Virus record (IMG/VR): IMGVR_UViG_3300033997_000478
Location: 186,001-250,000 of that record
Reading direction: 5' to 3' (one strand)
Length of the DNA stretch: 64,000 nt
The position numbers and the translations under genes were made by a program. The notes under the pieces are model-generated. The model was not told the origin of the DNA, did not search any database, and was given only the letters and a program-made list of their open reading frames with translations. Shown here in pieces: positions 10,663 through 54,997 of the stretch. Each line of letters begins with the position of its first letter. The stretch's first letter is position 1.

Positions 10663-10917
10663 ATGTCGAAAATGTCAACGGTACTCGCACTCGTGGTGGG
10701 CGGATTGGCGGCGGTGGTTGTGGTGAACGCACGATCTGCGCGCACCGGTTTCTTCTCGGTGGAAAGTCAGGTGCAGTTTGACGAGACTTACTTCTATCGC
10801 CTGATCGACCGCGAACTGGGGACGGTCTGCTACTACCGGCACGCCAGTCGCATGCCGCCGATACCGCTGGGGTGCGTTAAGTACGCCGAACCCCCGGCCC
10901 AACCAAGGAAGCTGTAA
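10663..10917 (+). CDS. small membrane-anchored protein (paralog of 8504..8821)
   Basis: N-terminal TM segment; LIDRELGTVCYY..GCV. Confidence 0.65.
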   Translation: MSKMSTVLALVVGGLAAVVVVNARSARTGFFSVESQVQFDETYFYRLIDRELGTVCYYRHASRMPPIPLGCVKYAEPPAQPRKL

Positions 10918-11339
10918 TGGAAGTGGTAGTCAAAGAAACCCCGCCGGTTCGTCAATTCTTGGCCGATTGGTCTAGGCAGGTCAACCCGAAAGCGTGCTCG
11001 CCACTTGCGAAAATGGAACTTCGCATCACCCACGACGTCACGAAGCATGTCGGCAAGTTGGATGAGTGCCTCGCCAAGTTCAAGAAACCGCGTAACAGTG
11101 CGATTGGCCCCTCGTACTCGCGCCTGCTGCGGGGCCTCTACGTGCATGCTCACAAGGGCCGTTCCAAGCGCAAGCACTGGCGCCCGCGCAAGCCGCTGGA
11201 GCTGGTGGAAGTCTACGTACTCGGCAATTCGTACGTGACCGCTCCACCACACACCGTGCACGTCCCCAGTTCGGGACTGCTAGAAATCAACCACACCTTC
11301 ACTTTCAAGGATCCCGATGAAATCTCTGCTGAACAGTGA
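10917..11339 (+). CDS. basic protein carrying the RGxYxHxHKG motif
   Basis: LRGLYVHAHKGRSKRKH at 11127..11177. Confidence 0.7.
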   Translation: MEVVVKETPPVRQFLADWSRQVNPKACSPLAKMELRITHDVTKHVGKLDECLAKFKKPRNSAIGPSYSRLLRGLYVHAHKGRSKRKHWRPRKPLELVEVYVLGNSYVTAPPHTVHVPSSGLLEINHTFTFKDPDEISAEQ

Positions 11340-11703
11340 ACCGGTGGATACCCAGTCCACCAAACGCGCCATTCCGCTGGCGAGTGAACTCAAAGCCAAC
11401 GGTGTACGGATCAACCCGTGCTTCATCGCCGAAGATGGGAAGCTCGATTTCCTCCCCGGTGCGAACCGGGTCGATGAACTGCACAACGATCCGACCTTTG
11501 CCAATGAGCCGCTCGTGCTGACCAACCGCAACGGCGCCAGCTACATGGAGTTCGTCAACTCCACCTTCTTCGCCCTGTGGATCTGGCTCTACCCCGATCT
11601 GCAGATTCCCATGGGGCAGGAGCGTGAGAAGCTGCGCGACCACGTCCACATCGCCGCCCAGCTGAAAGCTGCCCAGCTCGGCCTGAAGCTGTACCTCAGC
11701 TGA
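11317..11703 (+). CDS. hypothetical protein
   Basis: 128-aa ORF coupled to neighbours. Confidence 0.6.
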   Translation: MKSLLNSEPVDTQSTKRAIPLASELKANGVRINPCFIAEDGKLDFLPGANRVDELHNDPTFANEPLVLTNRNGASYMEFVNSTFFALWIWLYPDLQIPMGQEREKLRDHVHIAAQLKAAQLGLKLYLS

Positions 11704-22535: not shown

Positions 22536-24530
22536 ATGACGAAGAAAATGTTGCTCGACCCCGGTTTCGAACTGACGCTGCGCCCGATGCGCTACCCGCA
22601 GTTCTACGACATGTACCGCGACGCGATCAAGAACACCTGGACGGTTGATGAAATCAACTTCCAGCTGGACATCAGCGACCTGCATGACAAGATGACGCCG
22701 GCCGATCGACACCTGATCCACCGCCTGGTTGCGTTCTTCGCCACCGGCGACAGCATCGTCTCCAACAACCTGGTGCTCAACCTGTACCAGCACCTGAACT
22801 CACCTGAAGCGCGCATGTACCTGTCGCGCCAGCTGTACGAAGAAGCCCTGCACGTGCAGTTCTACCTGACCCTGCTGGACAACTACCTGCCGGATCCGGA
22901 ACAGCGCAATGCCGCCTTTGCTGCGGTCGAGAACATCCCCTCGATCAAGAAGAAGGCCGACTTCTGCTTCAAGTGGATCGACTCGATCCAGGACCTGCAC
23001 AAGCTGGAAACCCGCGAACACCGCCGGCAGTTCCTGCTCAACCAGATCTGCTTTGCCGCGATCATCGAAGGCCTGTTCTTCTTCGCTGCCTTCGCCTACG
23101 TGTACTACTTCCGTTCGCGCGGTCTGCTCTCCGGCCTGGCCAGCGGCACCAACTGGGTGTTCCGCGACGAAAGCTGTATGCCTGTGGACTCCACGGAGAT
23201 TTTGACCGATAAGGGCTTTGTGGGCCTGCGTGAGGTCATTGCGCGGGGCGAGGCGGGCGATAGCTTCAACGTTGCCCAGTACGCCGCTGACGGCACTGTG
23301 AGCTTTGTGGAACCGCGCGGTTATGTACTCAAGCCTTTCAACGGTGAGCTGATCCACTGCCGCACTGAGAAGAGTGTGTCGCTACTGACCACCGATGACC
23401 ATGACAACGTGACGCGCTCCAAAACCACCGGTGCACTGCGCAAGACTAAAGCGATGGACATGTCGCTTTCTTCGACGTCGGAAATGGTCTGCGCCGGCTT
23501 CGGCATGGGTCCTGCGGCTACGTTGACTGACATCGAACGCTTTGCTATCGTTTACCAGGCCGATGGCGTTGAGCGCGTCAATGGTAATGGTGAGCGCAGC
23601 GGTACTGTTGGCGTTAAGTTTGGCTTTGCCAAGGAACGCAAGATCCAGCGCTTTGAAGCGCTGTTGGATCGCCTGCGGTGGGATTACTCCAAGGTCATCA
23701 GCTCTCGTGAAAACGAGCGTAACGACCAGGTTGTGTACCGCGTTAAGATGCCTGCCTCGCTGATGGCAATCATCGACAAGGACTTCTCCTGGGTGACTAT
23801 GGATCGGATCCATAGCAACTGGGCGCGTGAGTTCATCGAAGAGGTCTCCCATTGGGACAGTTATCTGGCTGAAGACCGCACCTGCGTGCAGTACATCAAT
23901 ACCAACGAGGACGCGGTTAACAAGGTACAGGCGGTGGCCGCTCTGGCCGGGTATGCCACCAACCTCTACCGCAAGACCGACGGCCGTAGCGACAGCTACA
24001 ACGACGTGTACAACCTGTTTATCAAGCATCGCGATTACGCTGACCTGCATAATGCGGAATTGGTCACCGTACCGTTCACCGGGGATGTCGGTTGTGTGAA
24101 CGTACCCACCGGAATGATCATCGTTCGTCAGGACGGTAAGGTTCACGTTACCGGGAACTGCCACATGAACTTCGCCTTCGAGTCGGTGCGCGTGATCCGT
24201 GAAGAAGAGCCGGACCTGTTCGACGCCGAGATGGAAGCGCAGGTGTACCAGATGCTGGAAGAAGGCATCGAGTGCGAGCTGCAGTTCGCTGAAGACGTCC
24301 TCTCCGGCGGCGTGGCTGGCATCTCCACCAACGACATGCGCCAGTACCTGCAGCACTGCGCCGACAACCACTTCCTGCGCCTGGGCATGAAGAAGAAGTA
24401 CAACGTCTCCAACCCGCTGCCGTTCATGGAGCTGCAGGACGTCCAGGAACTGACCAACTTCTTCGAGCGCCGCGTCTCGGCCTACCAGGTCGGCGTGCAA
24501 GGCGAAGTTGCCTTCGACATGAACTTCTAA
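22536..24530 (+). CDS. nrdB: class Ia ribonucleotide reductase beta subunit, intein-containing
   Basis: FFATGD, YEEALHVQFY, IEGLFF, RDES/CH, NFFE; 328-aa in-frame insertion. Confidence 0.97.
   Translation: MTKKMLLDPGFELTLRPMRYPQFYDMYRDAIKNTWTVDEINFQLDISDLHDKMTPADRHLIHRLVAFFATGDSIVSNNLVLNLYQHLNSPEARMYLSRQLYEEALHVQFYLTLLDNYLPDPEQRNAAFAAVENIPSIKKKADFCFKWIDSIQDLHKLETREHRRQFLLNQICFAAIIEGLFFFAAFAYVYYFRSRGLLSGLASGTNWVFRDESCMPVDSTEILTDKGFVGLREVIARGEAGDSFNVAQYAADGTVSFVEPRGYVLKPFNGELIHCRTEKSVSLLTTDDHDNVTRSKTTGALRKTKAMDMSLSSTSEMVCAGFGMGPAATLTDIERFAIVYQADGVERVNGNGERSGTVGVKFGFAKERKIQRFEALLDRLRWDYSKVISSRENERNDQVVYRVKMPASLMAIIDKDFSWVTMDRIHSNWAREFIEEVSHWDSYLAEDRTCVQYINTNEDAVNKVQAVAALAGYATNLYRKTDGRSDSYNDVYNLFIKHRDYADLHNAELVTVPFTGDVGCVNVPTGMIIVRQDGKVHVTGNCHMNFAFESVRVIREEEPDLFDAEMEAQVYQMLEEGIECELQFAEDVLSGGVAGISTNDMRQYLQHCADNHFLRLGMKKKYNVSNPLPFMELQDVQELTNFFERRVSAYQVGVQGEVAFDMNF
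23175..24158 (+). mobile_element. intein in NrdB, probably with a degenerate LAGLIDADG-type endonuclease
   Basis: Starts CMPVDSTEILTDKG, ends VGCVNVPTG..VRQDGKVHVTGN followed by +1 Cys; removal restores RDES-CHMNF. Confidence 0.93.
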
Positions 24531-26753: not shown

Positions 26754-26786
26754 AAAAAAGTTTCATCGCTATAATACCCTCGTGAA
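26754..26786 (+). promoter_or_regulatory. putative phage promoter, copy 1
   Basis: AAAAAAGTTTCATCGCTATAATACCCTCGTGAA; motif recurs at 28931 and 51761. Confidence 0.6.
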
Positions 26787-26833: not shown

Positions 26834-27532
26834 ATGTCTGAGATTTTCAACGTCACCGCCGAGACCACCTACCGTCAGCTGGCCAAGGCCACTGGCATCC
26901 CGCTGAAGGATCTGCTCCAGGATCTGAAGGACAAGGGCTACAAGGTCAAGCGTGACTACCGCGTGCGCGCCACCAGCCCGCACTACAGCCGCGTACGCAA
27001 GGTGCTGGACCAGTACGAACTGGCAGTGGGTGTCAAGTTCATCAAGGTGGCTGCCAGCGTCCGCATGGCCAACCACAACCACAACATGGCCCTGTACCGC
27101 AAGAAGGTCAAGACCATCAGTACGGCCGAGCTGGTGGAAGCGTTCGGCAAGGCAACGCGCAACCGTCGCCTGCGCAAGACCGAAGACGGCAAGCTGATCA
27201 AGGTCACCAAGACCGCAGCCAAGAAGACTTCGGCCAACAACTCGGGTCTGACGATCCGTGAGCTGGAAAAGGAGATCTTCTTCGTCGACAAGCTGCGTGT
27301 GGTGATCCGTGCTCCGTCGCATCTGCGCAGCGGCTGCACCACCTACGGCAAGGCGCTGCCGAAGGGCTCCACCGTGGAGACGCTGACCCGTCGCCTGGAA
27401 CGCTACTTCCGCAACAGCCGTCATGCTGAAGAGCTGGCCGGTGTCGAGTTCGTGGTGATCACCCCGCGCGGTGAAGCGCATCACAACACCCGCACCAAGA
27501 AGCTGCCGATCGCTCGCGCTCGCTTCGAGTAA
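26834..27532 (+). CDS. highly basic putative nucleic-acid-binding protein
   Basis: AAGGAG RBS; K/R-rich; N-terminus TYRQLAKATGIPLKDLLQDLKDKG. Confidence 0.75.
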   Translation: MSEIFNVTAETTYRQLAKATGIPLKDLLQDLKDKGYKVKRDYRVRATSPHYSRVRKVLDQYELAVGVKFIKVAASVRMANHNHNMALYRKKVKTISTAELVEAFGKATRNRRLRKTEDGKLIKVTKTAAKKTSANNSGLTIRELEKEIFFVDKLRVVIRAPSHLRSGCTTYGKALPKGSTVETLTRRLERYFRNSRHAEELAGVEFVVITPRGEAHHNTRTKKLPIARARFE

Positions 27533-44952: not shown

Positions 44953-47900
44953 TTACGCCTGCGGGACTTCTTCAGGCGGCATGACCTTCGTGCGGACGTA
45001 GTTCTGCTGACGCACGATCGTGGCCAGCGGGTACTCGCCGATATTCACGTAGGCATTCTGACCGTAGATCAGGTAGCCGTCGGTGTTGGAGTTACCCGTG
45101 TTGGCCTTGTCCACCAGGATGCCCTTGACGTTCGAGCAGGACAGCGGCAGACGTTCCGGCATCAGCTGACCGTTCTCGTCAATCACGAACACGTCGCGAT
45201 TGTGACCGAAGCGGTTGCCGTTCGAATCGCGCCACCAGGCCGTACGCTTGGCCACCATGAAGCCGCTCTGGTCGCTCAGCGGGACCAGATCGACCAAGCC
45301 GTAGCCATCGCTCTGGCTCTCGTCGGAACCTTCCAGAATGCGACCATTCCAGGCCGGATCCACCTTCCAGTCCGAGGTCAACCGTTCGACCGTGAACAGG
45401 TCGTAGTCGTAGGTCGGATTGGCCAGACGGGTCCGGCTGCTGTACACGATCCAGCCGTTGGTGTACGGGCAGGCGTAGACCTTGTAAATCTGGCAGTTCT
45501 GGTTGGCCTTGAACGGCTGGGCATTGGATGCCGGCACCGTACCGTCGGACTTGATCAGGATCGGCTGATAGCCCTTGGTGCCGCCCTGGTTGACGATCAG
45601 ATCGCCGTTGGGCAGCATCAGCGCCGAACGGAAGTCGATGTCGGCCAGCGAACCGCCCGGATTCATCGGGTTGTTCCAGCTACCGTCCACCGTACCATCA
45701 GCGTTGAACTTGGCGATGTAGTAGCAGTCGTTAACGCCGACCTTACGCAGTGCGCTGGAGATCAGGAACACCTTACCGTCGGGGGTGACCGACAGGGTGG
45801 CATTGTTGACGTTGCGACCACCGAACTGGTCGATCAGGTCCGGCTGCGGCCAGACCGTGGCCGTGCCACCGTTGGGTGCCACACGAGCAAAACCGTAGAA
45901 GGTCACGTTGTTGACGCGGGTAATGCTGCCGGACATCAGGATGCTGTCATCCTGACACACCACCACGCTGGTCAGATCGTTGATCGTGGTGTTGCTGGCC
46001 GAGAAGGCCGGTGTGAAGCTGGTGTCCAGCGAACCCATGCGCGTGGTCGGATCACCGACATTGCCCCGATCGGCCTTGAGGCGGAACAGGTAGCGGTTGG
46101 CGTTGACACCGGCCACATTGGCGAAGGGACCTGCGACCAGGACCTTACCGTCGGACTGCTGCACAGCATGGGTCACGTAGGCGGCAACTTCGGTATTGCT
46201 ACCGATGTTGTCAGCCGGCGACGGGCTGGGGTAACGCATGTCGTTGACCGGCGGAATGACCGGGGTGTAGACCGGCTCGGCCGTACCTTCAGCAGTGGCC
46301 GTCACGTAGGTGGCCTGCTCGGTCAGGTCAACGTCCTTGAACAGGTCCTCGGTGCCGGTTCCGTACTGCCAACCACCGAAGGTCTCGCGGTCGGTCGTCC
46401 AAGCCAGGAACTCGCCGTCAGCGTCAGCGCGCTTGCCGGAGATCACAATGCGTTCGCCGTTGTCGTAGATACGGCCTTCGCTGATGCGGCTGTCTTGCAG
46501 TACCACACCTTGCTCAGCGTCGGAATTGCCGATGGTACGGTAGAGTACGATGCCGTAGCGGTCGAACGGGACACCTTGGTCGTCGTTGATCGAGGCGCGG
46601 TCGATATAGATCAGCACCTTGTTGCCGACCACAGCCATGTGCTTGAACTCACCTGCACCCGGTGCTTCGGTGGCCTGCGGGAACTGGGTCTGCCAGTTCG
46701 GCCAGTAGTCCAGCGGGTAGATGTTCATGCTGTAGCTGCCCGGACCGGTAATGCCGACCTCGAAGTAGACCTCACGGGTCTTGTTCGACTGCGCCAGATC
46801 GACCCACTCGCACTTGCCCAGGCCGATGACCATGCCTTCGTAGACGGCCAGTGCGTGCACACGGATCTGCGGTTCGGGCACGATCTCCGGCGAGCTGGAC
46901 CATTCGTGGAACAGCTTGATGCGGTTCCAGTTGACAGCGTCTTCGGATTGGTGCAGCCAGGTGGTGGGCTCGTAGGAGAGCTTGTTGTCGTCGGGCTCTT
47001 CGCTGGTCATGGCCAGCGTATTGGCATCGGCGGCAATGGCCGGTAGGAAGGTGTTCTGCAGCGCGATGATCGGCTGGAAGTTGAACACGCCACCGGTTTC
47101 GTCTTCTTCCTGCAGGCGGCACACCCAGAGGATGTTGGTCGCAGCGTGGATGAAGTAACCGTAGACAGCACCCTTGAAATACGCCAGCATGCGACCGGTG
47201 AACTTCCAATCCGGATAGCCCTGCGTGTTACCTTGGACCGGACCTTCGTCGTTACGCAGGTCGTCCTTACGCCAGACCTGGCCGCCGTTGGTGGTGCGAT
47301 GCAGGGTGGTCCACTGGTTCTTGCCCAGGAAGGCCCAGATACGGCCTGCCTTGTCGCCAACAGCCGCTTCGGTCTTGACGTACTGCCAGTTGGTGCCGAA
47401 CACCGGGGCCAGCGAATCGGGGATCGACTCGTAGGTGGCAAAGTCGCTGGTGACGCCACGGGCCATGGAGTTGGACAGGAAGAAGCCGGTCTTACCCGTC
47501 GGCTCCGGATCAACTGGACCGGTGGAACCTTCGCCCACGGTGCAGGCCAGTTCGCCAAACAGCAGGTAGGAGGTCGACTTGGCCTTGATGGTCACGCTGA
47601 ACGGCGCAGTGCCACTGCGGTCGATCGGCTCGTCGATGATGTCATCGGCGGTGATCGTGATGCCAGCGCGAGCGGACAGCTTGGGCAGCAGCTGATGGGT
47701 GCCGGTCTCGTTGCCGTCAGCGAACTCCTTGCTGCGCAGGGAGAACAGCTTCTGCAGCTGCAGGCGGTTGTAGGTGACATCCAAGTCGACCGAGGGTTCA
47801 GCACCGGCCTTGGTGGAGATCTTGGTGGACGTATTGCGCTTGCCGGCGACGGACAGGTCCAGCACGGTGGGGTCAACCAGCACCAGCGGAGCGTAGTCAA

Positions 47901-47985
47901 CTTGTGCCAGGGTAAGCTCGGTCTGCAGGCGTGCATTGACCAAATCCAGCAGGTGCTGCTGGATGTTCGTGATGGGTTGGGACAT
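44953..47985 (-). CDS. large virion protein, candidate tail fibre/receptor-binding protein
   Basis: N-terminal RNT..YNRL anchor domain; beta-propeller-like region with QxDGK.L / LD.SF (Delta-60-like) repeats. Confidence 0.75.
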   Translation of the reverse strand: MSQPITNIQQHLLDLVNARLQTELTLAQVDYAPLVLVDPTVLDLSVAGKRNTSTKISTKAGAEPSVDLDVTYNRLQLQKLFSLRSKEFADGNETGTHQLLPKLSARAGITITADDIIDEPIDRSGTAPFSVTIKAKSTSYLLFGELACTVGEGSTGPVDPEPTGKTGFFLSNSMARGVTSDFATYESIPDSLAPVFGTNWQYVKTEAAVGDKAGRIWAFLGKNQWTTLHRTTNGGQVWRKDDLRNDEGPVQGNTQGYPDWKFTGRMLAYFKGAVYGYFIHAATNILWVCRLQEEDETGGVFNFQPIIALQNTFLPAIAADANTLAMTSEEPDDNKLSYEPTTWLHQSEDAVNWNRIKLFHEWSSSPEIVPEPQIRVHALAVYEGMVIGLGKCEWVDLAQSNKTREVYFEVGITGPGSYSMNIYPLDYWPNWQTQFPQATEAPGAGEFKHMAVVGNKVLIYIDRASINDDQGVPFDRYGIVLYRTIGNSDAEQGVVLQDSRISEGRIYDNGERIVISGKRADADGEFLAWTTDRETFGGWQYGTGTEDLFKDVDLTEQATYVTATAEGTAEPVYTPVIPPVNDMRYPSPSPADNIGSNTEVAAYVTHAVQQSDGKVLVAGPFANVAGVNANRYLFRLKADRGNVGDPTTRMGSLDTSFTPAFSASNTTINDLTSVVVCQDDSILMSGSITRVNNVTFYGFARVAPNGGTATVWPQPDLIDQFGGRNVNNATLSVTPDGKVFLISSALRKVGVNDCYYIAKFNADGTVDGSWNNPMNPGGSLADIDFRSALMLPNGDLIVNQGGTKGYQPILIKSDGTVPASNAQPFKANQNCQIYKVYACPYTNGWIVYSSRTRLANPTYDYDLFTVERLTSDWKVDPAWNGRILEGSDESQSDGYGLVDLVPLSDQSGFMVAKRTAWWRDSNGNRFGHNRDVFVIDENGQLMPERLPLSCSNVKGILVDKANTGNSNTDGYLIYGQNAYVNIGEYPLATIVRQQNYVRTKVMPPEEVPQA

Positions 47986-48045
47986 CTGAAACTCCTCGTC
48001 GGAACGAAAGGGTGTTATCGAATTTGAAATCGACTCACAACATAA

Positions 48046-48075
48046 GTGGAGGTCCCCGAAGGGACCTCCTTACTC
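48046..48075 (-). terminator. intrinsic terminator-like hairpin
   Basis: GGAGGTCCC-CGAA-GGGACCTCC with CATAA flank (TTATG on the minus strand). Confidence 0.65.
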
Positions 48076-48093
48076 ATGCTACAAAACTGGAGA

Positions 48094-48549
48094 TTACTGC
48101 TGATTGGCCGAGCGCTTGACTTGGATCTGTACCGTACCAAACACGCCGTAGGAGTTCGCCTTCGCAGTCAACTGCAAAGTGGCGTTGTCGCTGTCGCCGA
48201 CAGGAACGGTGTCTTCAATATCAGCCGTACCAACCTCCCGGCCCAACCATTGGGAGAGCGTAGCGACGATCTGGTGAGCGCTGGTGGGCATTACATCCAC
48301 TACCAGCAGGTTGCTCTTCAGTCCGGCCAACTTGGCCAGACTCAGACGATTGTACTCAAGTACCAGATTTAGCTTGGGATCGGTAGGTAGCTTGTTGGTA
48401 AAGCGTACCGAGGTGTTGCGGATGTCGGGATCTTCAAACCCCGTGGCATCGTTGAGTTTGATCGGCAGTCCAACATTGGCGTTGTCTAGACTCAGTTCGG
48501 TCTGGAATAGCTTGTTGGCGTACCCAATCACTCTAGTCAGATTATCCAC
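48094..48549 (-). CDS. virion structural protein (RNT..YNRL paralog family)
   Basis: IRNTSV..LEYNRLSL..TADIED. Confidence 0.7.
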   Translation of the reverse strand: MDNLTRVIGYANKLFQTELSLDNANVGLPIKLNDATGFEDPDIRNTSVRFTNKLPTDPKLNLVLEYNRLSLAKLAGLKSNLLVVDVMPTSAHQIVATLSQWLGREVGTADIEDTVPVGDSDNATLQLTAKANSYGVFGTVQIQVKRSANQQ

Positions 48550-48998
48550 GTGTTACCTCCTGGCGGCCGGACATCGATCTCCACCGCACCGGTCACGGCC
48601 AACGAACCAGGCTTGGCAACCAAGGTGATGATGGCCGTATCCCCGTTCTTCGGGATGGGCGCATCTTCCACGTCTTGCGGTCCCAAACGAATGCGCAGGT
48701 AAGTGGCCAAGATGGGCAGAGCTTCGTGGACAGTGGCAGGTAGCTGCTGCGCGTGAAGTTCCGGAGCCAGCGCTACAGTCAGCTGTTCCAGATCCAGTCG
48801 GTTGTAGTACACCAACAGATCACGCGGCTTGACGGGTTGGTTCTTGATCTCCACCGAGATCGAGGTGTTCTTACCTTCCCCACCTACGCCGGGCACGCCG
48901 TACAGCAGGTCTTCCTCACGCAGGTTGAACTGGAAGCCGGCGTTATCCATGGTCTTCTGGATAAGGTCACGCATCATTTCAGAGGGCGTCTGGATCAC
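48537..48998 (-). CDS. virion structural protein (RNT..YNRL paralog family)
   Basis: KNTSI..YYNRLDL..PQDVED. Confidence 0.7.
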   Translation of the reverse strand: MIQTPSEMMRDLIQKTMDNAGFQFNLREEDLLYGVPGVGGEGKNTSISVEIKNQPVKPRDLLVYYNRLDLEQLTVALAPELHAQQLPATVHEALPILATYLRIRLGPQDVEDAPIPKNGDTAIITLVAKPGSLAVTGAVEIDVRPPGGNTWII

Positions 48999-49477
48999 GG
49001 CGCAGCTCCTGTTACAGTGAAGCGCTCCAGACCGAAGTAGGTGCGCGATTCAGGATGGGCTTCCACGTCCACCACCAGCGGCCAAACACCAGCGCCGTCA
49101 ATGGGGCGATCCACCAGATCTTCGGCACTGATGGGCATGCCAGAGATGGCGGCCAACTGCGGGGCCAGATCACGGGTAGAGGTCGGCTGACCGCTCAATA
49201 CGTGCTCACGGCCATAGAAAAGGTTGGGGATGAAAATGCGGTTATAGTGCAGCTCAGTATCAAACGCTCGTCGAGCATCAGGCGTGGAGGACATCCGGAT
49301 GGTGCTGTTACGCGGCGCTTGGTGGATGTTGGTTGCCGAGGCGTCGATCAACACTGGCACTCCAAAGACAACCTCCGAGAGCAGCACGGCCGTTTGATTG
49401 CGCACATTGAGGTGGAGCAACAGCAGCTCCTCTACACTCAAGTCCGCAGACGGGTACTCGGGCAACTGGTCAGACAT
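48995..49477 (-). CDS. virion structural protein (RNT..YNRL paralog family)
   Basis: RNSTI..HYNRIFI..AEDLVD. Confidence 0.7.
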   Translation of the reverse strand: MSDQLPEYPSADLSVEELLLLHLNVRNQTAVLLSEVVFGVPVLIDASATNIHQAPRNSTIRMSSTPDARRAFDTELHYNRIFIPNLFYGREHVLSGQPTSTRDLAPQLAAISGMPISAEDLVDRPIDGAGVWPLVVDVEAHPESRTYFGLERFTVTGAAP

Positions 49478-49506
49478 GGCTTCACCGAAAAGAAAGGCGA
49501 GATAAA

Positions 49507-49533
49507 AACCCTCCTGCCCGAAGGCAGGAGGGC
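49507..49533 (-). terminator. intrinsic terminator-like hairpin
   Basis: CCCTCCTGCC-CGAA-GGCAGGAGGG with T-run on the minus strand. Confidence 0.7.
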
Positions 49534-49556
49534 ACGCTGCAACGCGTTGGTGTTAC

Positions 49557-51104
49557 TTAGGCAGCCGCACGGTTGTCGGTGATGGACTCAACGGTCCATT
49601 CAGCGCCATCGGCGGTCAGCTTGAAGACCGAACCCACTTCCAGGTCTTCGACCAGGGCTTCGACGAACTCGCCGTCAACCTGGATCCACACAGCTTCGCT
49701 GGCGCCGCTGGAGAAGTTGCTCAGGTTGCCTTCGGCGTCACGAGCGGAGTACTCGAAGTCCGACTTCTCTTCAGCTTCGTCTTCGGACTGCACTTCCTCG
49801 GCCGGAGCAGCAGCCGGTTCTTCAGCCGGTGCGTCCTGGATGGACACGTTCTCGTCCGAACCGGCGCTGTCGGTGGCAGCTTCATCAGCCGCGCTGTTGT
49901 CGGCGCTGTCGACGTCGCCATCGGTGAAACCTTCTTCGTCGCCAACCGGGGCGGAGAAGGAAGCGATCATCGCCTGCGGCACTTCGCCGCCATCGGCAAC
50001 CTTGGTGGCGCTGACGGTGTAGCTCACCACGACCGGATCGATACCGGTGGCCTGCTTACGCACGGCCTTGGCTTCGATGGTGTAGTCGCCCAGCAGGGCG
50101 CCGGCTTCATTGGTTTCCACGCTGCCGAAGGCCTGCTTGTAGGCCGACAGGCGCTGGATGTCCTGGTAGACCGACTGGTCGCCCGAGACGAAGCCGTTGA
50201 CGATGCGCAGATCGTTGGCGGTGTCGACGAAGACCAGCTTGCCGTATTCGCGCTTCAGGGCGAAGTTGAGCACGCCGCCGCCGGTACCGGCAGTGACCTT
50301 CAGGGAGATGTCGTACAGGTCGGTGATGGTCGAGCCGTTCTTCTTGTTCAGCAGGGCGAAGCTGTACGGCAGGTTCCAGTCGGCGGTTTCGCCGACCACC
50401 AGCGCGTAGCTGTTCTCGCTCGGAGCGACCAGGTTGGCGTTCTTGAACAGGCGGGCGCCGACGGCGATTTCCAGTTCACCGTTGTCGGCCACGATCAGCT
50501 TGCCATTCGGGTTGCCGGTGCCGGCAGCGAGGGTACCGTCGGCCTTCAGCGCCAGCGGCGCGGCGATCGGAGCATTGACGACTTCTTCGACCGGGGTGAT
50601 GATGCTGGTATCCTGCACGATGGCCTTGGCCACGTCCACGGCGAACTGGCCGGTGAAGCGCAGCGAGGTATCGGTGGCACGCAGCAGCACGCTGGTCGGC
50701 AGCTTGGTCGGATCAACGGTCACCGCAGCCAGGTCGGCGTCGCCGGCGACGGTCTCGAAGACGACCTTGACTTCGTCCTTGATCTTGGCAGCGATGCTGA
50801 CGATGTCGATCGTCTCGCCTTCGGCAAAGCGCAGGGTCAGGTGCTTGTTCAGGAACAGCCGGCCCAGGTCGAGGCGGTTGTAGTGGATCGGGACCAGCAG
50901 GCCGGTTTCGCCTTCCGGCAGCACCACGGCTTCAGGAAGGGCTTCCTTCTTGATGGTGATGTCGATGTCGGTGTTGTAGTCGACGTCGGCCGAGGAGGTC
51001 GGGGCGCCGATGATCAGGTCGCTGACGGTGTAGCTGGTGCCGTTTTCTTGGTTGAGCAGCTGGACGATGGTTTCTTCACCACCGTGGATCAGTTCAATGG
51101 ACAC
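49557..51104 (-). CDS. virion structural protein (YNRL family) with extra domains and acidic tail
   Basis: GTG start at 51104 after CAAGGA; YNTD..HYNRLDL. Confidence 0.75.
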   Translation of the reverse strand: MSIELIHGGEETIVQLLNQENGTSYTVSDLIIGAPTSSADVDYNTDIDITIKKEALPEAVVLPEGETGLLVPIHYNRLDLGRLFLNKHLTLRFAEGETIDIVSIAAKIKDEVKVVFETVAGDADLAAVTVDPTKLPTSVLLRATDTSLRFTGQFAVDVAKAIVQDTSIITPVEEVVNAPIAAPLALKADGTLAAGTGNPNGKLIVADNGELEIAVGARLFKNANLVAPSENSYALVVGETADWNLPYSFALLNKKNGSTITDLYDISLKVTAGTGGGVLNFALKREYGKLVFVDTANDLRIVNGFVSGDQSVYQDIQRLSAYKQAFGSVETNEAGALLGDYTIEAKAVRKQATGIDPVVVSYTVSATKVADGGEVPQAMIASFSAPVGDEEGFTDGDVDSADNSAADEAATDSAGSDENVSIQDAPAEEPAAAPAEEVQSEDEAEEKSDFEYSARDAEGNLSNFSSGASEAVWIQVDGEFVEALVEDLEVGSVFKLTADGAEWTVESITDNRAAA

Positions 51105-51224
51105 AGGGTCTCCTTGTTTCGTGAACGAGTTGTTATTTGACTTGGGGGCCTTTGCATAGGATGAGACGTCCCAAGCTAAAAAATTAATGGTCTGACACCT
51201 TTCTATAGAGCCAGAGGACACGTT

Positions 51225-51761
51225 ATGTCTAACGTCTATCAATTCACACCCAAGACAGCACAAAGGCATATCATGACCGACGGTGAGCGAGAGTCTGTGG
51301 TTCGCACTCTCAACGCTCGGGCACATGAAGCCTTCTTCCCCCTCAACCGGTTGTTCACTCGTTTTGCCATCACCGTCAACGAGTATCCGCTGGAGAATCC
51401 AGTCATCAAGGACTTGGAGAAGGTTGGCACGCTCATGACCGCCGACTATCCCAACTTCGATCTGACGTGGTTGTTTCGCATCGAAAAGATCCGCAGCAAA
51501 CCCCGCATGCCGGCCATTCCCGATGACCAGATCTACGGGTTACTGAGAAAGGGCGCTGAGGCGTTGGGTTTGATTCCCCATGGCGTCAGGTTTGCCTATC
51601 GCTACTTGCACGAGCTTGGTAGCGTGGTGTGGTGCGAATCGATCATTGTCATAGAGGACAGTATCATCGTGGACGGCTTCATCGCAGCCGAACACTTGGG
51701 CGCAGAGGGAGATCGCACCTATCATCCGTTTAAGATGGTGGTCCGAAAACTGCCTCAATGA
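51225..51761 (+). CDS. hypothetical protein
   Basis: GAGGA RBS. Confidence 0.6.
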   Translation: MSNVYQFTPKTAQRHIMTDGERESVVRTLNARAHEAFFPLNRLFTRFAITVNEYPLENPVIKDLEKVGTLMTADYPNFDLTWLFRIEKIRSKPRMPAIPDDQIYGLLRKGAEALGLIPHGVRFAYRYLHELGSVVWCESIIVIEDSIIVDGFIAAEHLGAEGDRTYHPFKMVVRKLPQ

Positions 51762-51793
51762 AAATACTTTCAGGACTATAATACCTCAGTGAA
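51761..51793 (+). promoter_or_regulatory. putative phage promoter, copy 3
   Basis: AAAATACTTTCAGGACTATAATACCTCAGTGAA. Confidence 0.6.
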
Positions 51794-52409: not shown

Positions 52410-52679
52410 ATGATCGACATCTTGACCCTCTTTATCAACCCGATCAGCCAGATGCGCGGGCGTTACATTCACGCCCACAAGGGACGCGGGCGCAGGCGGG
52501 GACATCCCAAACCCTTCGAACCGTCCTCCAAAACGCGGCGGCGTCAGGAGGCGATGTTCCAACAGGCCCAGCAGGAACTCGATCTACGCCGGCAGTTGGA
52601 TGAGTGGTTCAGTCAGAACATGGGTCGCATCAGCCCTGCCTTCGGCGTGATGTTGCAAAACCCTGAGAAGTCTGTATAG
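52410..52679 (+). CDS. RGxYxHxHKG-motif protein
   Basis: MRGRYIHAHKGRGRRRGH. Confidence 0.7.
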   Translation: MIDILTLFINPISQMRGRYIHAHKGRGRRRGHPKPFEPSSKTRRRQEAMFQQAQQELDLRRQLDEWFSQNMGRISPAFGVMLQNPEKSV

Positions 52680-52688
52680 TTCGAATCA

Positions 52689-52738
52689 CTGGCTTCGGCC
52701 AGGTTCCAAACGAAGGTCTTCGGACCTTCGGCTTTATA
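52689..52738 (+). terminator. double hairpin / terminator
   Basis: CTGGC-TTCG-GCCAG then CGAAGGTC-TTCG-GACCTTCG-GCTTTATA. Confidence 0.6.
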
Positions 52739-52763
52739 CCCTCAACCTAGAAAGGATAGCTAC

Positions 52764-53108
52764 ATGAGCGTTACCGTTGAAGATTTCACCACGGAGTGGA
52801 ATCGCGAGCTGGATCGTCGCAATCGCTTCTCTCACATCCTGCGCGGCATTGCCCGTGAGAACGCTCAGTCGCTCAATGCGGCAGAGCTGAACAAGATGGA
52901 GATCGACGAGAAGATCCGTCAGGCCATCTACGTGTGGGCCCACCGCAATCAGCGCGGACGCTACCTGCACAGCCACAAGGGTAAGGCGCGTCGGCAGCAC
53001 AAGCGGACTCCGATGATGCAGTCGCAGGCCCGCTACCGGATTGCCCGGATGGTGGGGCGTGAGTCCCAGCGCACCAGTAGTCTGGACCGGCTGCTGATCG
53101 CTGCGTAA
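52764..53108 (+). CDS. RGxYxHxHKG-motif protein
   Basis: QRGRYLHSHKGKARRQH; AAGGA RBS. Confidence 0.75.
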   Translation: MSVTVEDFTTEWNRELDRRNRFSHILRGIARENAQSLNAAELNKMEIDEKIRQAIYVWAHRNQRGRYLHSHKGKARRQHKRTPMMQSQARYRIARMVGRESQRTSSLDRLLIAA

Positions 53109-53183
53109 GTAACAGCGGTAACACAGGGGCGGGTGCGGAAGCATCCGCCCTTATTCTTTCTCTTTCTCACAAGGAACGCTACA

Positions 53184-53354
53184 ATGAAAACCATCGAGAA
53201 TTCCGTTCTGGAAATGGCCGAGCAGATCAAGGCCGGTATGAAGGTCACCGAAGAGGGCCTGATCGAAGCGGGCGACATGCACATTGGTTCGATGTCACCT
53301 ACTCGTGATCAGATGGCGGCCGGTCACATGACGCAGGTTGCGGTGAAGTCATGA
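53184..53354 (+). CDS. small hypothetical protein
   Basis: AAGGAA RBS; ATGA overlap with the next gene. Confidence 0.55.
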   Translation: MKTIENSVLEMAEQIKAGMKVTEEGLIEAGDMHIGSMSPTRDQMAAGHMTQVAVKS

Positions 53355-53533
53355 GGTTCCGTTACGTAATGGACGTGCGGATTGCTCAGGCGCTCTACCT
53401 GCGCGGTAAGTACGTGCACAGTCACAAGGGCAAGTACAAGCGCCGTCACAGGCGAGCATCGGTGGCACGCGTGGTGCCGCAGATCTTCGTCGGTGAAATC
53501 CACTTCGCAACCACTGTTGTTACCCCGGAGTAA
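53351..53533 (+). CDS. RGxYxHxHKG-motif protein (60 aa)
   Basis: LRGKYVHSHKGKYKRRH. Confidence 0.7.
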   Translation: MRFRYVMDVRIAQALYLRGKYVHSHKGKYKRRHRRASVARVVPQIFVGEIHFATTVVTPE

Positions 53534-53536
53534 GCC

Positions 53537-54010
53537 ATGGTTACCGACTCAGTTATCCCCGTGTGTGATTGCGGCAAGACCGTTGGTGCTTCCAAGGTGG
53601 GCTTGATGTGTGAGCACTGCAACAGTCCGGTAAAAGCTGTCGTCGATCTGTTCCTGCCTTTAGCGACGTCTTCCTACAGGCGGATGAGGACCCGTGAGAC
53701 GGTCAAGAACATCATGACCGGGCCTGCACCTGAACAACCCAAGTCCCCCTACCCGCGCCGCAACCCGGCGCGCATTCCTGGCGCCTACGAACGAACCATC
53801 TGGGGCCTGGAGAAACGCGGCAAGACCTACAGTGTCGACCAGCTGCTTCGTGGCCGCTACGTCCTGCGTCACAAGGGCAAGCCGCTGCGGCAGCACAAGC
53901 TCACCTCCAAGGGACATCTCCACCTCGGCATGCGCGAGATCCTGGCGAACGAACCGCGCCTGCTCGTCACCATCAATCGCATGCCGAAGTTCAACCCTTT
54001 CGTTGTCTAA
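53537..54010 (+). CDS. RGxYxHxHKG-motif protein with N-terminal CxC..CxxC
   Basis: CDCG..CEHC; LRGRYVLRHKGKPLRQH. Confidence 0.7.
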   Translation: MVTDSVIPVCDCGKTVGASKVGLMCEHCNSPVKAVVDLFLPLATSSYRRMRTRETVKNIMTGPAPEQPKSPYPRRNPARIPGAYERTIWGLEKRGKTYSVDQLLRGRYVLRHKGKPLRQHKLTSKGHLHLGMREILANEPRLLVTINRMPKFNPFVV

Positions 54011-54038
54011 TCGATTCGCCCCCACAAGGACCGCACCA

Positions 54039-54482
54039 ATGAATGACCTTCCCACCCACCACAACGAACGCATCGTCCCAACGTTCGTCAGTCCTGATGA
54101 TTCGCGTCTGCAAGGGATCGAACATCGTGACAACTGGTACGAGCCGCGCAATGACGCAGAATGGGCTGAAGTGACGAAAGATCAAGCCACTGCCAAGTGG
54201 CTGATCGCTAACCATAAGGCGAAGATGCGCAATGAACTGCGCGGGCGCTTTGTGCACATGCACAAGAGCCGTCGTTTGCGTAAGCATGCTCGTCGCGCCG
54301 GCCACTACCACTTCCACGCCCAACTGATGAATGACCAGAACATCCTGAGTCTTCAGACGGGTCTGCTGAGGTGGAGCGCTCGCCAGCCGGTTCGACTGAT
54401 GGGTGAGTCCGAAGTTCGCTTGGTCCAAGTTGTTGTTTCGCCCTCCGTAATCACCTCTCTCCTGAAGGATTCTGATCTATGA
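54039..54482 (+). CDS. RGxYxHxHKG-motif protein
   Basis: LRGRFVHMHKSRRLRKH; AAGGA RBS. Confidence 0.7.
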   Translation: MNDLPTHHNERIVPTFVSPDDSRLQGIEHRDNWYEPRNDAEWAEVTKDQATAKWLIANHKAKMRNELRGRFVHMHKSRRLRKHARRAGHYHFHAQLMNDQNILSLQTGLLRWSARQPVRLMGESEVRLVQVVVSPSVITSLLKDSDL

Positions 54483-54997
54483 GCAATGAACAGCGCGTCA
54501 ATGACGAACTGGAACGACAGCGCGATCGCTACCGTTCCATGATGAAGAACCACGGCTACGCACTGGTGACAGTGGAGGATGATGACAATGATCTTCCCTT
54601 CCACTACACGGTGGGGCTGACCAACGGCGGCCTGCCGGAACTGCTGTTGGTTGGCAAGTTCGAACGCCCGGTGGCCGAGCACATCCTCAACAGCGTGGCC
54701 GCGATCCTGATCGGTCGTGGCGCCACCAACCAGTTGGGTCAGTACAGCCAGATCAAGCTCACCGATCTACTGGCTGATGCCGAAGACCGGCCGATCCCGC
54801 TGCGCCTGCAGCTGATCAACCAAGCCGAGGCGGAACGGATGTACCTGATCCAAGCCGAACCCATCCTCCAAGACCATCTGGTGGGTGTGGTGCAGATCCT
54901 GACGCCGGACAATTGGGGACGCTATCCGGACGATTCGGGTTACAACTTCAACGACTACCCGCAGGTGCTGGCAGCACCAAAGGCCTACAGCCAATGA
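54479..54997 (+). CDS. DUF4262-like protein
   Basis: HGYALVTV..PFHYTVGLT..GLPELLLVG. Confidence 0.65.
   Translation: MSNEQRVNDELERQRDRYRSMMKNHGYALVTVEDDDNDLPFHYTVGLTNGGLPELLLVGKFERPVAEHILNSVAAILIGRGATNQLGQYSQIKLTDLLADAEDRPIPLRLQLINQAEAERMYLIQAEPILQDHLVGVVQILTPDNWGRYPDDSGYNFNDYPQVLAAPKAYSQ

What the first reader, a model, noticed from the sequence alone, without database searches (positions are those of the whole stretch)
52410..54482. Array of small basic proteins sharing a 17-aa RG[RK][YF]xHxHKG[KR]xxRxH motif
Seen: five of six consecutive genes carry the motif: MRGRYIHAHKGRGRRRGH (52410), QRGRYLHSHKGKARRQH (52764), LRGKYVHSHKGKYKRRH (53351), LRGRYVLRHKGKPLRQH (53537) and LRGRFVHMHKSRRLRKH (54039). 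A sixth copy, LRGLYVHAHKGRSKRKH, is at 10917. The proteins range from 60 to 157 aa, look unrelated outside the motif, and carry it at different positions. Third codon positions vary (CGC GGG, CGC GGA, CGC GGT, CGT GGC, CGG GGC), so conservation is at the protein level, not a DNA repeat. The cluster lies downstream of the putative early promoter at 51761. I recognise no family for this motif. Inference: a shared docking or address tag delivering different payloads to one target, such as the ribosome or rRNA (weak resemblance to the HKG..KR stretch of ribosomal protein L35), a host defence protein, or the phage nucleus import machinery; alternatively a His-based metal or nucleic-acid binding micro-domain. 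This is the best candidate for an undescribed system in this window.
Basis: partly seen in the sequence, partly recalled or inferred. Interest (0 to 1): 0.9.

Follow-up and report, generated by a model that had tools for sequence, protein, structure and literature searches.

The report
Jumbo-phage small basic motif proteins
A giant phage carries a cluster of small, very basic early genes that share one 17-residue peptide, and some of them also carry copied pieces of the phage's own RNA polymerase, so this is an undescribed, phage-only protein family that probably acts on the phage's transcription machinery.

Summary
Six copies of RG[RK][YF]xHxHK[GS][KR] lie in the window, all in + strand genes, against 0 in shuffles, and they are conserved as peptide, not as DNA. 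A seventh copy lies elsewhere in the same 324-kb genome, a phiKZ-like jumbo phage related to Xanthomonas phages RTH11 and LucasX.

A motif profile finds only 43 clusters among 1.84 billion proteins. Nearly all are small, unnamed and basic, with the motif at any position. The motif is absent from 185,579 cellular genomes, Pfam, PHROGs and the PDB. Related phages have arrays of different membership at the same site, downstream of a conserved early-type promoter. Copy number runs from about 1 (LucasX) to at least 7.

The proteins are not unrelated outside the motif. They are mosaics, and some modules are copies of the phage's non-virion RNA polymerase: the beta' zinc ribbon, and beta-C residues 657-690 and 3-18. 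One member carries a capsid-protein fragment.

Not supported: ribosomal protein L35, a three-His metal site, a general nucleus-import tag, host mimicry, and beta' switch 2 as the motif's origin.

Best reading, which is inferred: a common anchoring peptide joined to interface mimics that act on the phage polymerase. The function is untested.

The parts
51775..51785 (+). Conserved AT-rich element ACTATAATACC, a putative early (virion-RNAP) promoter upstream of the operon that holds the array
   Evidence: TATAATAC occurs twice in 64 kb against 0.1 expected. The element is invariant in five sister loci and conserved in RTH11 and LucasX. It fits the published description of jumbo-phage early promoters (PMC7598289).
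51834..52400 (+). 188-aa gene that forms the conserved left border of the variable array (no motif)
   Evidence: Orthologues occupy the same position in L010-L013, RTH11 and LucasX. dN/dS is 0.30.
52410..52679 (+). Family member 1 (89 aa, pI 11.4); motif at 52455-52505, near the N-terminus
   Evidence: Orthologues P0016 and P0021 keep the motif, while both flanks differ.
52711..52739 (+). Terminator-like hairpin (8-bp stem, TTCG loop, GCTTTAT tail) after member 1
52764..53108 (+). Family member 2 (114 aa, pI 11.3); motif at 52953-53000
   Evidence: Orthologues are P0002, P0004 and P0005; dN/dS is 0.13-0.22.
53125..53162 (+). Strong intrinsic-terminator-like hairpin (12-bp stem plus T-run) that splits the array
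53184..53354 (+). Motif-less member (56 aa, pI 5.1). It is the two ends of a 167-aa family gene whose central ~100 aa, including the motif, are deleted. It retains module M3 (SPTRDQMAAGHMTQV), which resembles nvRNAP beta-C residues 3-18.
   Evidence: (comparison with L010 5315-5818), (hhalign E=0.002).
53351..53533 (+). Family member 3 (60 aa, pI 11.3); motif at 53402-53449
   Evidence: AF2 with a 43-sequence alignment gives a helix at residues 9-17 followed by an extended motif, pLDDT 64.
53537..54010 (+). Family member 4 (157 aa, pI 10.4). It has an N-terminal Cys4 zinc ribbon (53549-53647) copied from the nvRNAP beta'-N subunit, a degenerate M2 at about 53765-53800, and the motif at 53849-53896.
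   Evidence: PHROG 2987 hit; tblastn against many phage beta' genes; BLASTP against 37 beta'-N subunits, 52-61% identity to the RTH11 type; phiKZ gp55, 7OGP; unbiased proteome search E=1e-6.
54039..54482 (+). Family member 5 (147 aa, pI 10.1). The motif is at 54240-54287. The C-terminal module (54375-54479) is homologous to nvRNAP beta-C residues 657-690.
   Evidence: BLASTP E=5e-5; hhalign probability 87%, E=4e-6; the module is invariant among orthologues.
54479..54997 (+). DUF4262 gene that forms the conserved right border of the array (not a family member)
   Evidence: Pfam PF14081, E=9e-17. It holds the same position in L010-L013.
10917..11339 (+). Dispersed family member (140 aa, pI 9.8); motif at 11130-11177. 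It lies downstream of the RecJ-like gene (6767-8500), a second conserved site for the family.
   Evidence: It has seven orthologues. RTH11 and LucasX also carry copies right after RecJ.

Best explanation
The cluster is an expanded, fast-turning-over family of small (57-221 aa), very basic, largely unstructured early proteins. The family is restricted to a clade of nucleus-forming phiKZ-like jumbo phages: this genome, sister metagenomic genomes, Xanthomonas phage RTH11, and a remnant in LucasX.

The one element common to all members is a ~19-residue peptide. A helix ends in Leu and is followed by R-G-[RK]-[YF]-[VIL]-[HL]-x-H-K-G-[KR]-x-x-R-[RQK]-[HG].

The rest of each protein is a mosaic of short modules. 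Several modules are copies of conserved segments of the phage's own non-virion RNA polymerase (nvRNAP):
- the beta' zinc ribbon;
- the beta-C 'PVRIxGExEVRL...' segment;
- the beta-C N-terminus.

**Proposed mechanism.** The shared peptide is a common anchor. It most probably binds nucleic acid (RNA, or DNA in a transcription complex) in the manner of an arginine-rich motif, or else one common protein partner. The borrowed polymerase segments act as interface mimics. They let individual paralogues engage whatever the parent segment normally contacts, for example the beta' subunits. In this way the proteins would modulate assembly, import or activity of the phage polymerase early in infection.

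**Shown:** the family, its motif, its restriction to phages, its mosaicism, the polymerase-derived modules, purifying selection, and its placement behind an early-type promoter.

**Inferred:** every statement about binding partners and effect.
For: **Motif and distribution.**
- The motif is real and selected as peptide.
- Only 43 clusters match among 1.84 billion representatives. Apart from one 675-aa repetitive hit they are small, and the motif sits at any position.
- It is absent from cellular genomes.

**Physical character.**
- Median pI is 10.4, and still 9.7 with the motif removed.
- AF2 finds no autonomous fold: helix, then extended motif, pTM 0.27.
- The invariant Gly at two positions, plus an aromatic residue, argue for a specific bound conformation rather than mere charge.

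**Array behaviour.**
- Arrays of different membership sit in a fixed genomic frame in five sister genomes.
- Fusion and deletion derivatives occur.

**Polymerase-derived modules.**
- Zinc ribbon matches nvRNAP beta'-N.
- W54039 residues 113-146 match beta-C 657-690. This block is as invariant as the main motif among orthologues.
- M3 matches beta-C residues 3-18.
- In an unbiased search of all 5,962 ORFs of RTH11 and LucasX, polymerase subunits are the top non-family hits.

**Link to polymerase import.** In phiKZ, the residue aligned with the end of the beta-C module (gp71-73 N643) is needed for import of both beta' subunits. The authors read this as a subunit-subunit contact (preprint 10.64898/2026.09.21.753271; alignment).

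**Timing.** A conserved early-type promoter element lies upstream.
Against: - No binding or localisation data exist.
- The main motif itself has no counterpart in any polymerase subunit.
- Three of the window's seven members (52410, 52764, 10917) show no polymerase-like module.
- One member (P0043) carries a capsid-protein fragment instead. The borrowed pieces are therefore not exclusively polymerase, and could be raw material rather than functional mimics.
- Detecting borrowed fragments is biased towards conserved genes.
- M3 and the degenerate M2 have only modest statistics.
- LucasX grows with a single degenerate copy, so the family is dispensable there.
- 'Early' expression rests on a promoter consensus only, and two terminator-like hairpins lie inside the array.
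Confidence: 0.3

Rival explanations
1. The proteins are generic nucleic-acid-binding host-takeover factors. The motif is an arginine-rich or AT-hook-like nucleic-acid anchor, and the proteins coat or target host DNA or RNA (nucleoid, mRNA, rRNA) early in infection. The polymerase and capsid fragments are only evolutionary filler, picked up by illegitimate recombination in a hypervariable region.
For: - The proteins are extremely basic, even without the motif, and no fold is predicted.
- They sit in a hypervariable island with fusions and deletions.
- A capsid-protein fragment in P0043 shows that pieces come from more than one source.
- Several members have no recognisable borrowed module.
Against: - The beta-C-like block is invariant among orthologues that are otherwise 58-71% identical, so it is selected.
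- Positional conservation of two Gly, an aromatic residue and a His is tighter than non-specific charge binding requires.
- The AT-hook core RGRP is not present; position +3 is always Y or F.
Confidence: 0.25
2. The motif is an address tag for the phage nucleus. It is a linear signal, or a shell/importer-docking peptide, that takes small cargoes to or into the chimallin compartment. The polymerase-like modules would let them ride with, or compete with, nvRNAP during import.
For: - The host clade is nucleus-forming in type: RTH11 encodes a tubulin and split RNAPs.
- The motif resembles a basic NLS and works at any position in the protein.
- nvRNAP import in phiKZ depends on subunit contacts and on a small, poorly structured, lineage-restricted factor, Imp7.
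- The W54039 module ends at the residue aligned with gp71-73 N643.
Against: - No linear import signal is known; selectivity is thought to use surface patches (PMC11087766).
- The motif is absent from all large, presumably nuclear enzymes in the window and in RTH11.
- Imp7 is acidic, lacks the motif and is unrelated.
- LucasX has essentially lost the family.
Confidence: 0.12
3. The motif is a ribosome- or rRNA-docking peptide resembling a ribosomal-protein extension. The proteins would then be analogous in role to the early ribosome binder PhiKZ014.
For: - The proteins are small, basic and probably early.
- There is precedent for an abundant early jumbo-phage protein on the 50S subunit (PMC10914614).
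Against: - There is no Pfam hit to any ribosomal protein family at E<=1, and no PDB hit, although thousands of ribosome chains are in the PDB.
- PhiKZ014 is a larger, folded protein, and nothing in the paper's description resembles this family; its sequence was not compared directly.
- The modules that could be identified come from RNA polymerase, not from translation proteins.
Confidence: 0.08
4. The motif is a His-based metal-binding micro-domain (H-x-H ... H).
For: Most copies have three His, at +5, +7 and +15.
Against: - H5 is Leu in 13 of 57 segments and H15 is Gly in 11 of 57. Only H7 is nearly invariant.
- No fold is predicted.
- No metal-site family matched.
Confidence: 0.04
5. The ORFs are decaying fragments of duplicated genes (gene debris) with no function.
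For: - They contain fragments of polymerase and capsid genes.
- Deletions and fusions occur.
- The family is nearly absent from LucasX.
Against: - dN/dS is 0.13-0.51, like the neighbouring control genes.
- Orthologues are kept across several genomes.
- Every gene has a Shine-Dalgarno-like sequence, and GC3 matches the genome.
- The motif is maintained through synonymous change.
Confidence: 0.03

Closest known systems
Arginine-rich-motif phage proteins that act on transcription complexes (lambda N, HK022 Nun). What is said of them here is from my own knowledge.
   Same: These are small, basic, intrinsically disordered early phage proteins. A short basic peptide anchors them to nucleic acid, and other short segments contact RNA polymerase. 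In Nun, His residues contribute to polymerase binding.
   Different: - There is no sequence similarity.
- The motif here has fixed Gly, aromatic and His positions, and occurs at any position in the protein.
- The family is multi-copy and mosaic.
- The relevant polymerase would be the phage's own multisubunit nvRNAP.
- RNA binding has not been tested.
Imp7 (phiKZ gp166), a small factor needed for maximal nvRNAP import into the phage nucleus (preprint 10.64898/2026.09.21.753271)
   Same: It is a small, lineage-restricted jumbo-phage protein with a low-confidence predicted fold, and it is functionally tied to nvRNAP.
   Different: Imp7 is acidic (pI 4.7), has no motif and shows no detectable similarity to any family member. 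It is a single-copy gene.
PhiKZ014, an early jumbo-phage protein that clamps 5S rRNA on the 50S subunit (PMC10914614)
   Same: It is an early, abundant jumbo-phage protein that uses Arg, Lys and His contacts to bind a host nucleic-acid machine.
   Different: PhiKZ014 is a folded multi-domain protein more than 260 residues long. It belongs to PHROG 16056, which the members here do not hit. No ribosomal link was found here.
nvRNAP subunits beta'-N (phiKZ gp55) and beta-C (gp71-73), PDB 7OGP
   Same: Some members contain true homologous copies of short segments of these subunits: the zinc ribbon, beta-C 657-690 and beta-C 3-18.
   Different: The members are 60-220 aa long and hold only 16-35-residue pieces. 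They have no catalytic or structural core, and the main motif is not found in any polymerase subunit. They are not polymerase subunits.
Short linear motifs of eukaryotic viral proteins. This comparison is from my own knowledge.
   Same: A conserved peptide a few residues long is embedded in disordered, fast-evolving viral proteins. It is position-independent and is combined with mimicry of partner interfaces.
   Different: Such motifs have been described mainly for viruses of eukaryotes. Here the partner is unknown, and the motif is longer (about 17 residues) and more conserved than typical motifs of this kind.

Membership tests
Ribosomal protein bL35 | Match to the Pfam Ribosomal_L35p profile or to solved L35 chains | tested here: not met
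   There was no Pfam hit at E<=1 for any of the six proteins. The motif profile found no ribosomal chain in the PDB at E<=10.
AT-hook | Core R-G-R-P flanked by basic residues | tested here: not met
   Position +3 after R-G-[RK] is Y (35) or F (22) in all 57 distinct segments, and never P.
Three-histidine metal-binding site | All liganding His conserved across the family | tested here: not met
   H5 is present in 43 of 57 segments (Leu in 13), H15 in 45 of 57 (Gly in 11) and H7 in 53 of 57.
Arginine-rich RNA-binding motif (lambda N / Tat type) | A short, Arg-rich, unstructured peptide | tested here: met
   The ~17 residues hold 6-8 Arg or Lys. AF2 predicts an extended coil with no fold.
Arginine-rich RNA-binding motif (lambda N / Tat type) | Specific binding to an RNA hairpin | not testable with these tools
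   This needs peptide-RNA binding assays. Stereotyped UUCG-loop hairpins are abundant in the genome, but nothing links them to the motif.
RNA polymerase beta' switch-2 segment as the origin of the main motif | The motif profile scores best, and in register, on the switch-2 segment of beta' subunits | tested here: not met
   Only negative scores were obtained on 37 phage beta'-N subunits, and they were not in register. No RNAP chain in the PDB matched at E<=10.
nvRNAP beta'-N zinc-binding domain (module of member 53537) | A CxCG...CxxC ribbon homologous to phage beta'-N | tested here: met
   Identity to RTH11-type beta' is 52-61% over 28-33 residues, E about 1e-8. The proteome-wide search gave E=7e-9. 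PHROG 2987 matched.
nvRNAP beta-C segment 657-690 (module of member 54039) | Profile-profile homology to the beta-C alignment | tested here: met
   hhalign gave probability 87% and E=4e-6 over 34 columns. BLASTP gave E=5e-5.
Imp7 (phiKZ gp166) | Sequence similarity or a shared motif | tested here: not met
   There was no HMM hit, the best BLASTP E-value was 1.2, and the pI is 4.7.
General phage-nucleus import signal | Presence in proteins expected to be nuclear (polymerases, ligase, helicase, RecJ) | tested here: not met
   The motif is found only in small ORFs, both in the window and in the complete RTH11 and LucasX genomes.
Mimic of a host protein | The motif is present in bacterial proteomes | tested here: not met
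   The degenerate DNA pattern found 2 chance-level hits in 185,579 species' genomes. Every profile hit is a small phage-like protein except one 675-aa repetitive outlier.

The most novel reading that the evidence does not exclude
These are polymerase-interface decoys. Each would be a small early protein that joins a common anchoring peptide to a copied contact surface of the phage's split non-virion RNA polymerase, or of the capsid protein. The proteins could then insert into, cap or titrate assembly intermediates. Their role would be either to time the phage's own switch from virion to non-virion polymerase and its import into the phage nucleus, or to poison the corresponding machines of related jumbo phages that co-infect the same cell. 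The zinc ribbon of member 53537 is closer to RTH11-type beta' (52-61%) than to this phage's own beta' (36%), which is compatible with the second role.
Probability: 0.15. Interest if true: 0.85.

Novelty: new variant of a known kind. Interest (0 to 1): 0.62.

Why it matters
Jumbo phages that build a nucleus and carry their own split RNA polymerases are a very active field. How the non-virion polymerase is assembled, licensed for import and regulated is only now being worked out. This is a phage-only family that pairs one strictly conserved peptide with copied polymerase segments. It would give direct handles on those interfaces: ready-made dominant-negative fragments that evolution has already selected. 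It would also be a rare bacterial-virus example of motif-plus-mimicry protein design. RTH11, a cultured Xanthomonas phage, carries at least four clear copies and LucasX about one, so the idea can be tested. If the borrowed pieces turn out to be mere filler, the family still defines a new basic peptide motif whose ligand is worth finding.

Tried and rejected
1. **Switch-2 origin of the main motif.** The lead was a remembered G-R-F-x5-G-K spacing. The motif HMM gave only negative, out-of-register scores on 37 beta'-N subunits, and no RNAP hit in the PDB.
2. **Member 53537 as a collinear degenerate beta'.** The second HSP, to the NRxPxL region, had E about 1 and was absent against the phage's own beta'.
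3. **Homology of the 52764 group to beta-C 498-605.** BLASTP gave E of 0.004-0.012 with LucasX only, and hhalign found nothing.
4. **Relation to Imp7.** None was found.
5. **L35, AT-hook, three-His metal site, host mimicry, general import tag.** See the membership tests.
6. **tblastn of a 34-aa motif segment against phage records.** It found nothing, not even the known RTH11 copy. Complete genomes were therefore fetched and scanned with an HMM instead.
7. **AF2 of the 140-aa member with 7 orthologues.** pLDDT was 39, which is uninformative. For that reason no fold search was run.
8. **Metagenome DNA-pattern scan.** Of 10 hits, 2 were real and both came from the same clade.
9. **A second search of the big protein database with 37 diverse members.** It was swamped by candidates and added little.
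10. **Own-versus-foreign comparison for M2.** The segment is equally conserved in the phage's own beta-C, so the comparison says nothing.
Full report
**1. The observation**

The six ORFs exist as described, and each carries the peptide. In the six-frame translation of the 64-kb window, RG.[YF]...HK[GS][KR] occurs six times. All six are on the + strand and inside these ORFs. Thirty shuffles gave none. The DNA encoding the copies is only about 66% identical and differs at synonymous sites, so this is not a DNA repeat.

All the genes have Shine-Dalgarno-like sequences and genome-typical GC3. Against orthologues in sister genomes, dN/dS is 0.13-0.51, compared with 0.17-0.30 for neighbouring control genes. 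Within the motif, 14-16 of 17 residues are identical despite 2-7 synonymous codon changes. The genes are real and the peptide is under selection.

**2. The genome**

The window is part of IMG/VR contig UViG_3300033997_000478 (324 kb). It encodes:
- a phiKZ-type major capsid protein;
- NAD-dependent ligase, a RecJ-like exonuclease and ribonucleotide reductase;
- a multisubunit-polymerase piece;
- an array of DUF7941 virion proteins.

The nearest cultured phages are Xanthomonas phages LucasX (capsid protein 74% identical) and RTH11 (70%). RTH11 encodes a tubulin and many split polymerase subunits, so it is of the nucleus-forming type.

**3. How widespread the motif is**

No Pfam or PHROG family matches any member, and no PDB chain resembles the motif.

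A 34-column motif profile searched against 1.84 billion representative proteins found 43 clusters at E<=1e-3. Nearly all are proteins of 57-221 aa, and the motif begins anywhere from residue 14 to residue 184. The one exception is a 675-aa repetitive protein with ten weak partial matches. No hit that carried source information had a name, and none came from NCBI.

| Scan | Result |
|---|---|
| IMG/VR, degenerate DNA patterns | only this genome, a fragment of it, and one other 295-kb phage contig (L006) with its own three-gene array |
| JGI metagenomes | 2 true hits among 10 |
| 185,579 bacterial and archaeal genomes | 2 chance-level hits |

The motif is therefore phage-only and rare.

The consensus from 57 distinct segments is [RQ]-x-L-R-G-[RK]-[YF]-[VIL]-[HL]-x-H-K-G-[KR]-x-x-[RK]-[RQK]-[HG]. 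R0, G1 and K8 are invariant. H7 and G9 are nearly so. H5 and H15 are replaceable. The tail comes in two flavours, '..RRQH' and 'SPKRGNPW'.

**4. The array is a variable island in a fixed frame**

In four sister contigs (L010-L013) the same frame is kept. It runs from divergent DUF7941 genes, through a 178-aa gene, a promoter element and a 188-aa gene, to the array, and then to DUF4262, a 173-aa gene and a convergent DnaB gene. The array itself holds four or five members of differing identity. RTH11 has one member there and LucasX none.

Whole-genome HMM scans give the following copy numbers:

| Phage | Copies |
|---|---|
| RTH11 | at least four clear copies: one in the array, two adjacent genes right after RecJ, one at 130.8 kb; plus weaker ones |
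| LucasX | one degenerate copy, again right after RecJ |
| Window's phage | at least seven, including one downstream of its RecJ gene (10917) and one near a contig end (L009) |

The family is therefore accessory and dynamic.

**5. Transcription signals**

ACTATAATACC (51775-51785) is conserved upstream of the 188-aa gene from this clade through to RTH11 and LucasX. TATAATAC occurs only twice in the window. Jumbo-phage early promoters are described as conserved AT-rich elements of about 10 nt near -10 (PMC7598289).

Terminator-like hairpins follow the first and second array genes. Early expression is therefore plausible but not shown.

**6. Physical character**

The motif-bearing members in the window have pI values of 9.8-11.4. 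The family median is 10.4, and it is still 9.7 with the motif removed.

AF2 gave pLDDT 39 for the 140-aa member. For the 60-aa member, with a 43-sequence alignment, it gave a short helix ending at the Leu before R-G, followed by an extended motif (pLDDT 64, pTM 0.27). This looks like a peptide that takes up structure only on a partner.

**7. The proteins are mosaics**

With the motif masked, all-against-all local alignment joins 25 proteins into one component. These include window genes 53184, 53351, 53537 and 54039.

The links are short modules found in different orders:
- **M2** ('QPVR[IL]xGE[ST]E[AV]R[LV]') lies before the motif in some members and after it in others.
- **M3** is 'SPxRxQxMxGHxTQV'.

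Fusion and deletion derivatives also occur:
- P0057 joins the first 23 residues of the 167-aa type to a complete zinc-ribbon type.
- The window's motif-less gene 53184-53354 is the two ends of the 167-aa type.

**8. Several modules are copies of the phage's own non-virion RNA polymerase**

(a) *Zinc ribbon.* Residues 5-37 of member 53537 form a Cys4 ribbon homologous to the N-terminal zinc-binding domain of beta'-N (phiKZ gp55). The evidence is a PHROG 2987 hit, tblastn hits to dozens of phage beta' genes, a weak hit to 7OGP chain A, and BLASTP against 37 beta'-N subunits. Identity is 52-61% to the RTH11 type but only 36% to this phage's own beta'.

(b) *beta-C 657-690.* M2 plus the following ~20 residues of member 54039 is homologous to residues 657-690 of beta-C. 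BLASTP gave E=5e-5, and hhalign gave probability 87% with E=4e-6. beta-C is the orthologue of phiKZ gp71-73 (7OGP chain C, E=2e-125). Among orthologues 58-71% identical overall, this block is invariant, like the main motif.

(c) *beta-C 3-18.* M3 resembles these residues. BLASTP gave E=1e-3, and hhalign gave E=0.002 at low probability.

(d) *Control for selective looking.* A motif-masked search of 69 family proteins against all 5,962 ORFs of RTH11 and LucasX ranked the non-family hits as follows:

| Rank | Hit |
|---|---|
| 1 | beta'-N |
| 2 | a 389-aa RTH11 protein with an internal beta'-type ribbon |
| 3 | the major capsid protein (a 38-residue fragment in P0043, including LSFGTHGWMPEVVA against LTFGTHGWMSELIA) |
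| 4 | beta-C |

Borrowed pieces are thus mostly, but not only, from the polymerase. The main motif itself has no counterpart in any polymerase subunit.

**9. Link to polymerase import**

A 2026 preprint shows that import of phiKZ nvRNAP subunits into the phage nucleus depends on Imp1, on the small factor Imp7 and on contacts between subunits. The mutation gp71-73 N643K impairs import of both beta' subunits.

phiKZ N642-N643 aligns with RTH11 N690-S691. That is where the member-54039 module ends. The copied beta-C segment therefore includes a region that the authors interpret as a contact with beta'.

Imp7 itself is acidic, lacks the motif and is unrelated to the family. No linear import signal is known (PMC11087766).

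**10. Interpretation**

*Shown:* a phage-restricted, multi-copy, mosaic family of small basic proteins. It is defined by one selected peptide, placed behind an early-type promoter, and includes selected copies of polymerase segments in some members.

*Inferred:* the peptide is a common anchor, either nucleic acid in the manner of an arginine-rich motif or one common protein. The copied segments would be interface mimics aimed at the phage polymerase, affecting its assembly, import or activity. I give this 0.3.

The main rival (0.25) is that the proteins are general nucleic-acid binders and the borrowed pieces are filler. A nucleus-address tag (0.12), ribosome docking (0.08), a metal site (0.04) and gene debris (0.03) follow. 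The remainder is unassigned.

**11. Novelty**

The family and its motif are undescribed. Its architecture, a strictly conserved position-independent peptide combined with copies of the virus's own polymerase surfaces, has no counterpart known to me in phages. The function is untested and the lineage is narrow. I therefore rate it a new variant of a known kind (small early accessory or arginine-rich phage proteins), with interest 0.62.

Noticed in passing
window 1477, 16930, 17833, 24900, 28868, 33089, 37099, 48048, 49532, 55527, 60793 (and others): The intergenic hairpins are stereotyped. Each has a C/G-rich stem of 8-12 bp, often a TTCG loop, and a (C)TTTATG tail. Many are flanked by an inverted CATAA...TTATG, so they read as terminators on both strands. 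In six-frame translation they produce recurring 'RHKxPxRRQG' strings.
   Followed up: partly
window 22536-24530: The ribonucleotide reductase small-subunit ORF is 664 aa. The NrdB-like matches lie at residues 16-213 and 532-654, with a different match in between. This suggests an inserted element, an intein or an endonuclease.
   Followed up: no
window 44953-51326 (- strand) and L010-L013: There is a tandem array of paralogous DUF7941 / PHROG 1037 virion structural proteins, of very different lengths (146-1072 aa). It is transcribed divergently from the motif operon.
   Followed up: no
window 9981-10652 and 11703-12599: A weak Macro-domain protein and a GNAT acetyltransferase flank the dispersed family member at 10917.
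   Followed up: no
window 26770-26777: This is the only other exact TATAATAC in the window, upstream of ORF 26834-27532. It is possibly another early promoter.
   Followed up: no
L072:34429-35598 (RTH11 record 182928-184097, WJJ55122): This 389-aa hypothetical protein has an internal zinc ribbon of the beta' type (residues ~175-214, PHROG 2987). The polymerase zinc-binding domain has therefore been copied into more than one non-polymerase gene in this clade.
   Followed up: partly
L071 ~27704 (RTH11 record ~126703, + strand): A motif-like sequence (LRGRFVRHHKNAR) lies on the + strand where the record annotates a - strand CDS (126502-126768). This may be a mis-called gene in a run of family members after RecJ.
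   Followed up: no
P0043 residues 87-124: This family member from a metagenome carries a 38-residue fragment of the phiKZ-type major capsid protein, matching residues 666-705 of the RTH11 protein.
   Followed up: partly
L020 (own beta'-N) compared with window 53549-53647: The zinc ribbon of member 53537 is much closer to RTH11-type beta' (52-61%) than to this phage's own beta' (36%). This suggests that the module was acquired horizontally, or that it is aimed at a foreign polymerase.
   Followed up: partly
L006 4233-5096 and 13965: An unrelated-looking 295-kb phage contig (UViG_3300048854_000232) has its own three-gene array, with the 'SPKRGNP' tail variant, and a fourth degenerate copy. Its relationship to phiKZ-like phages was not checked.
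   Followed up: no
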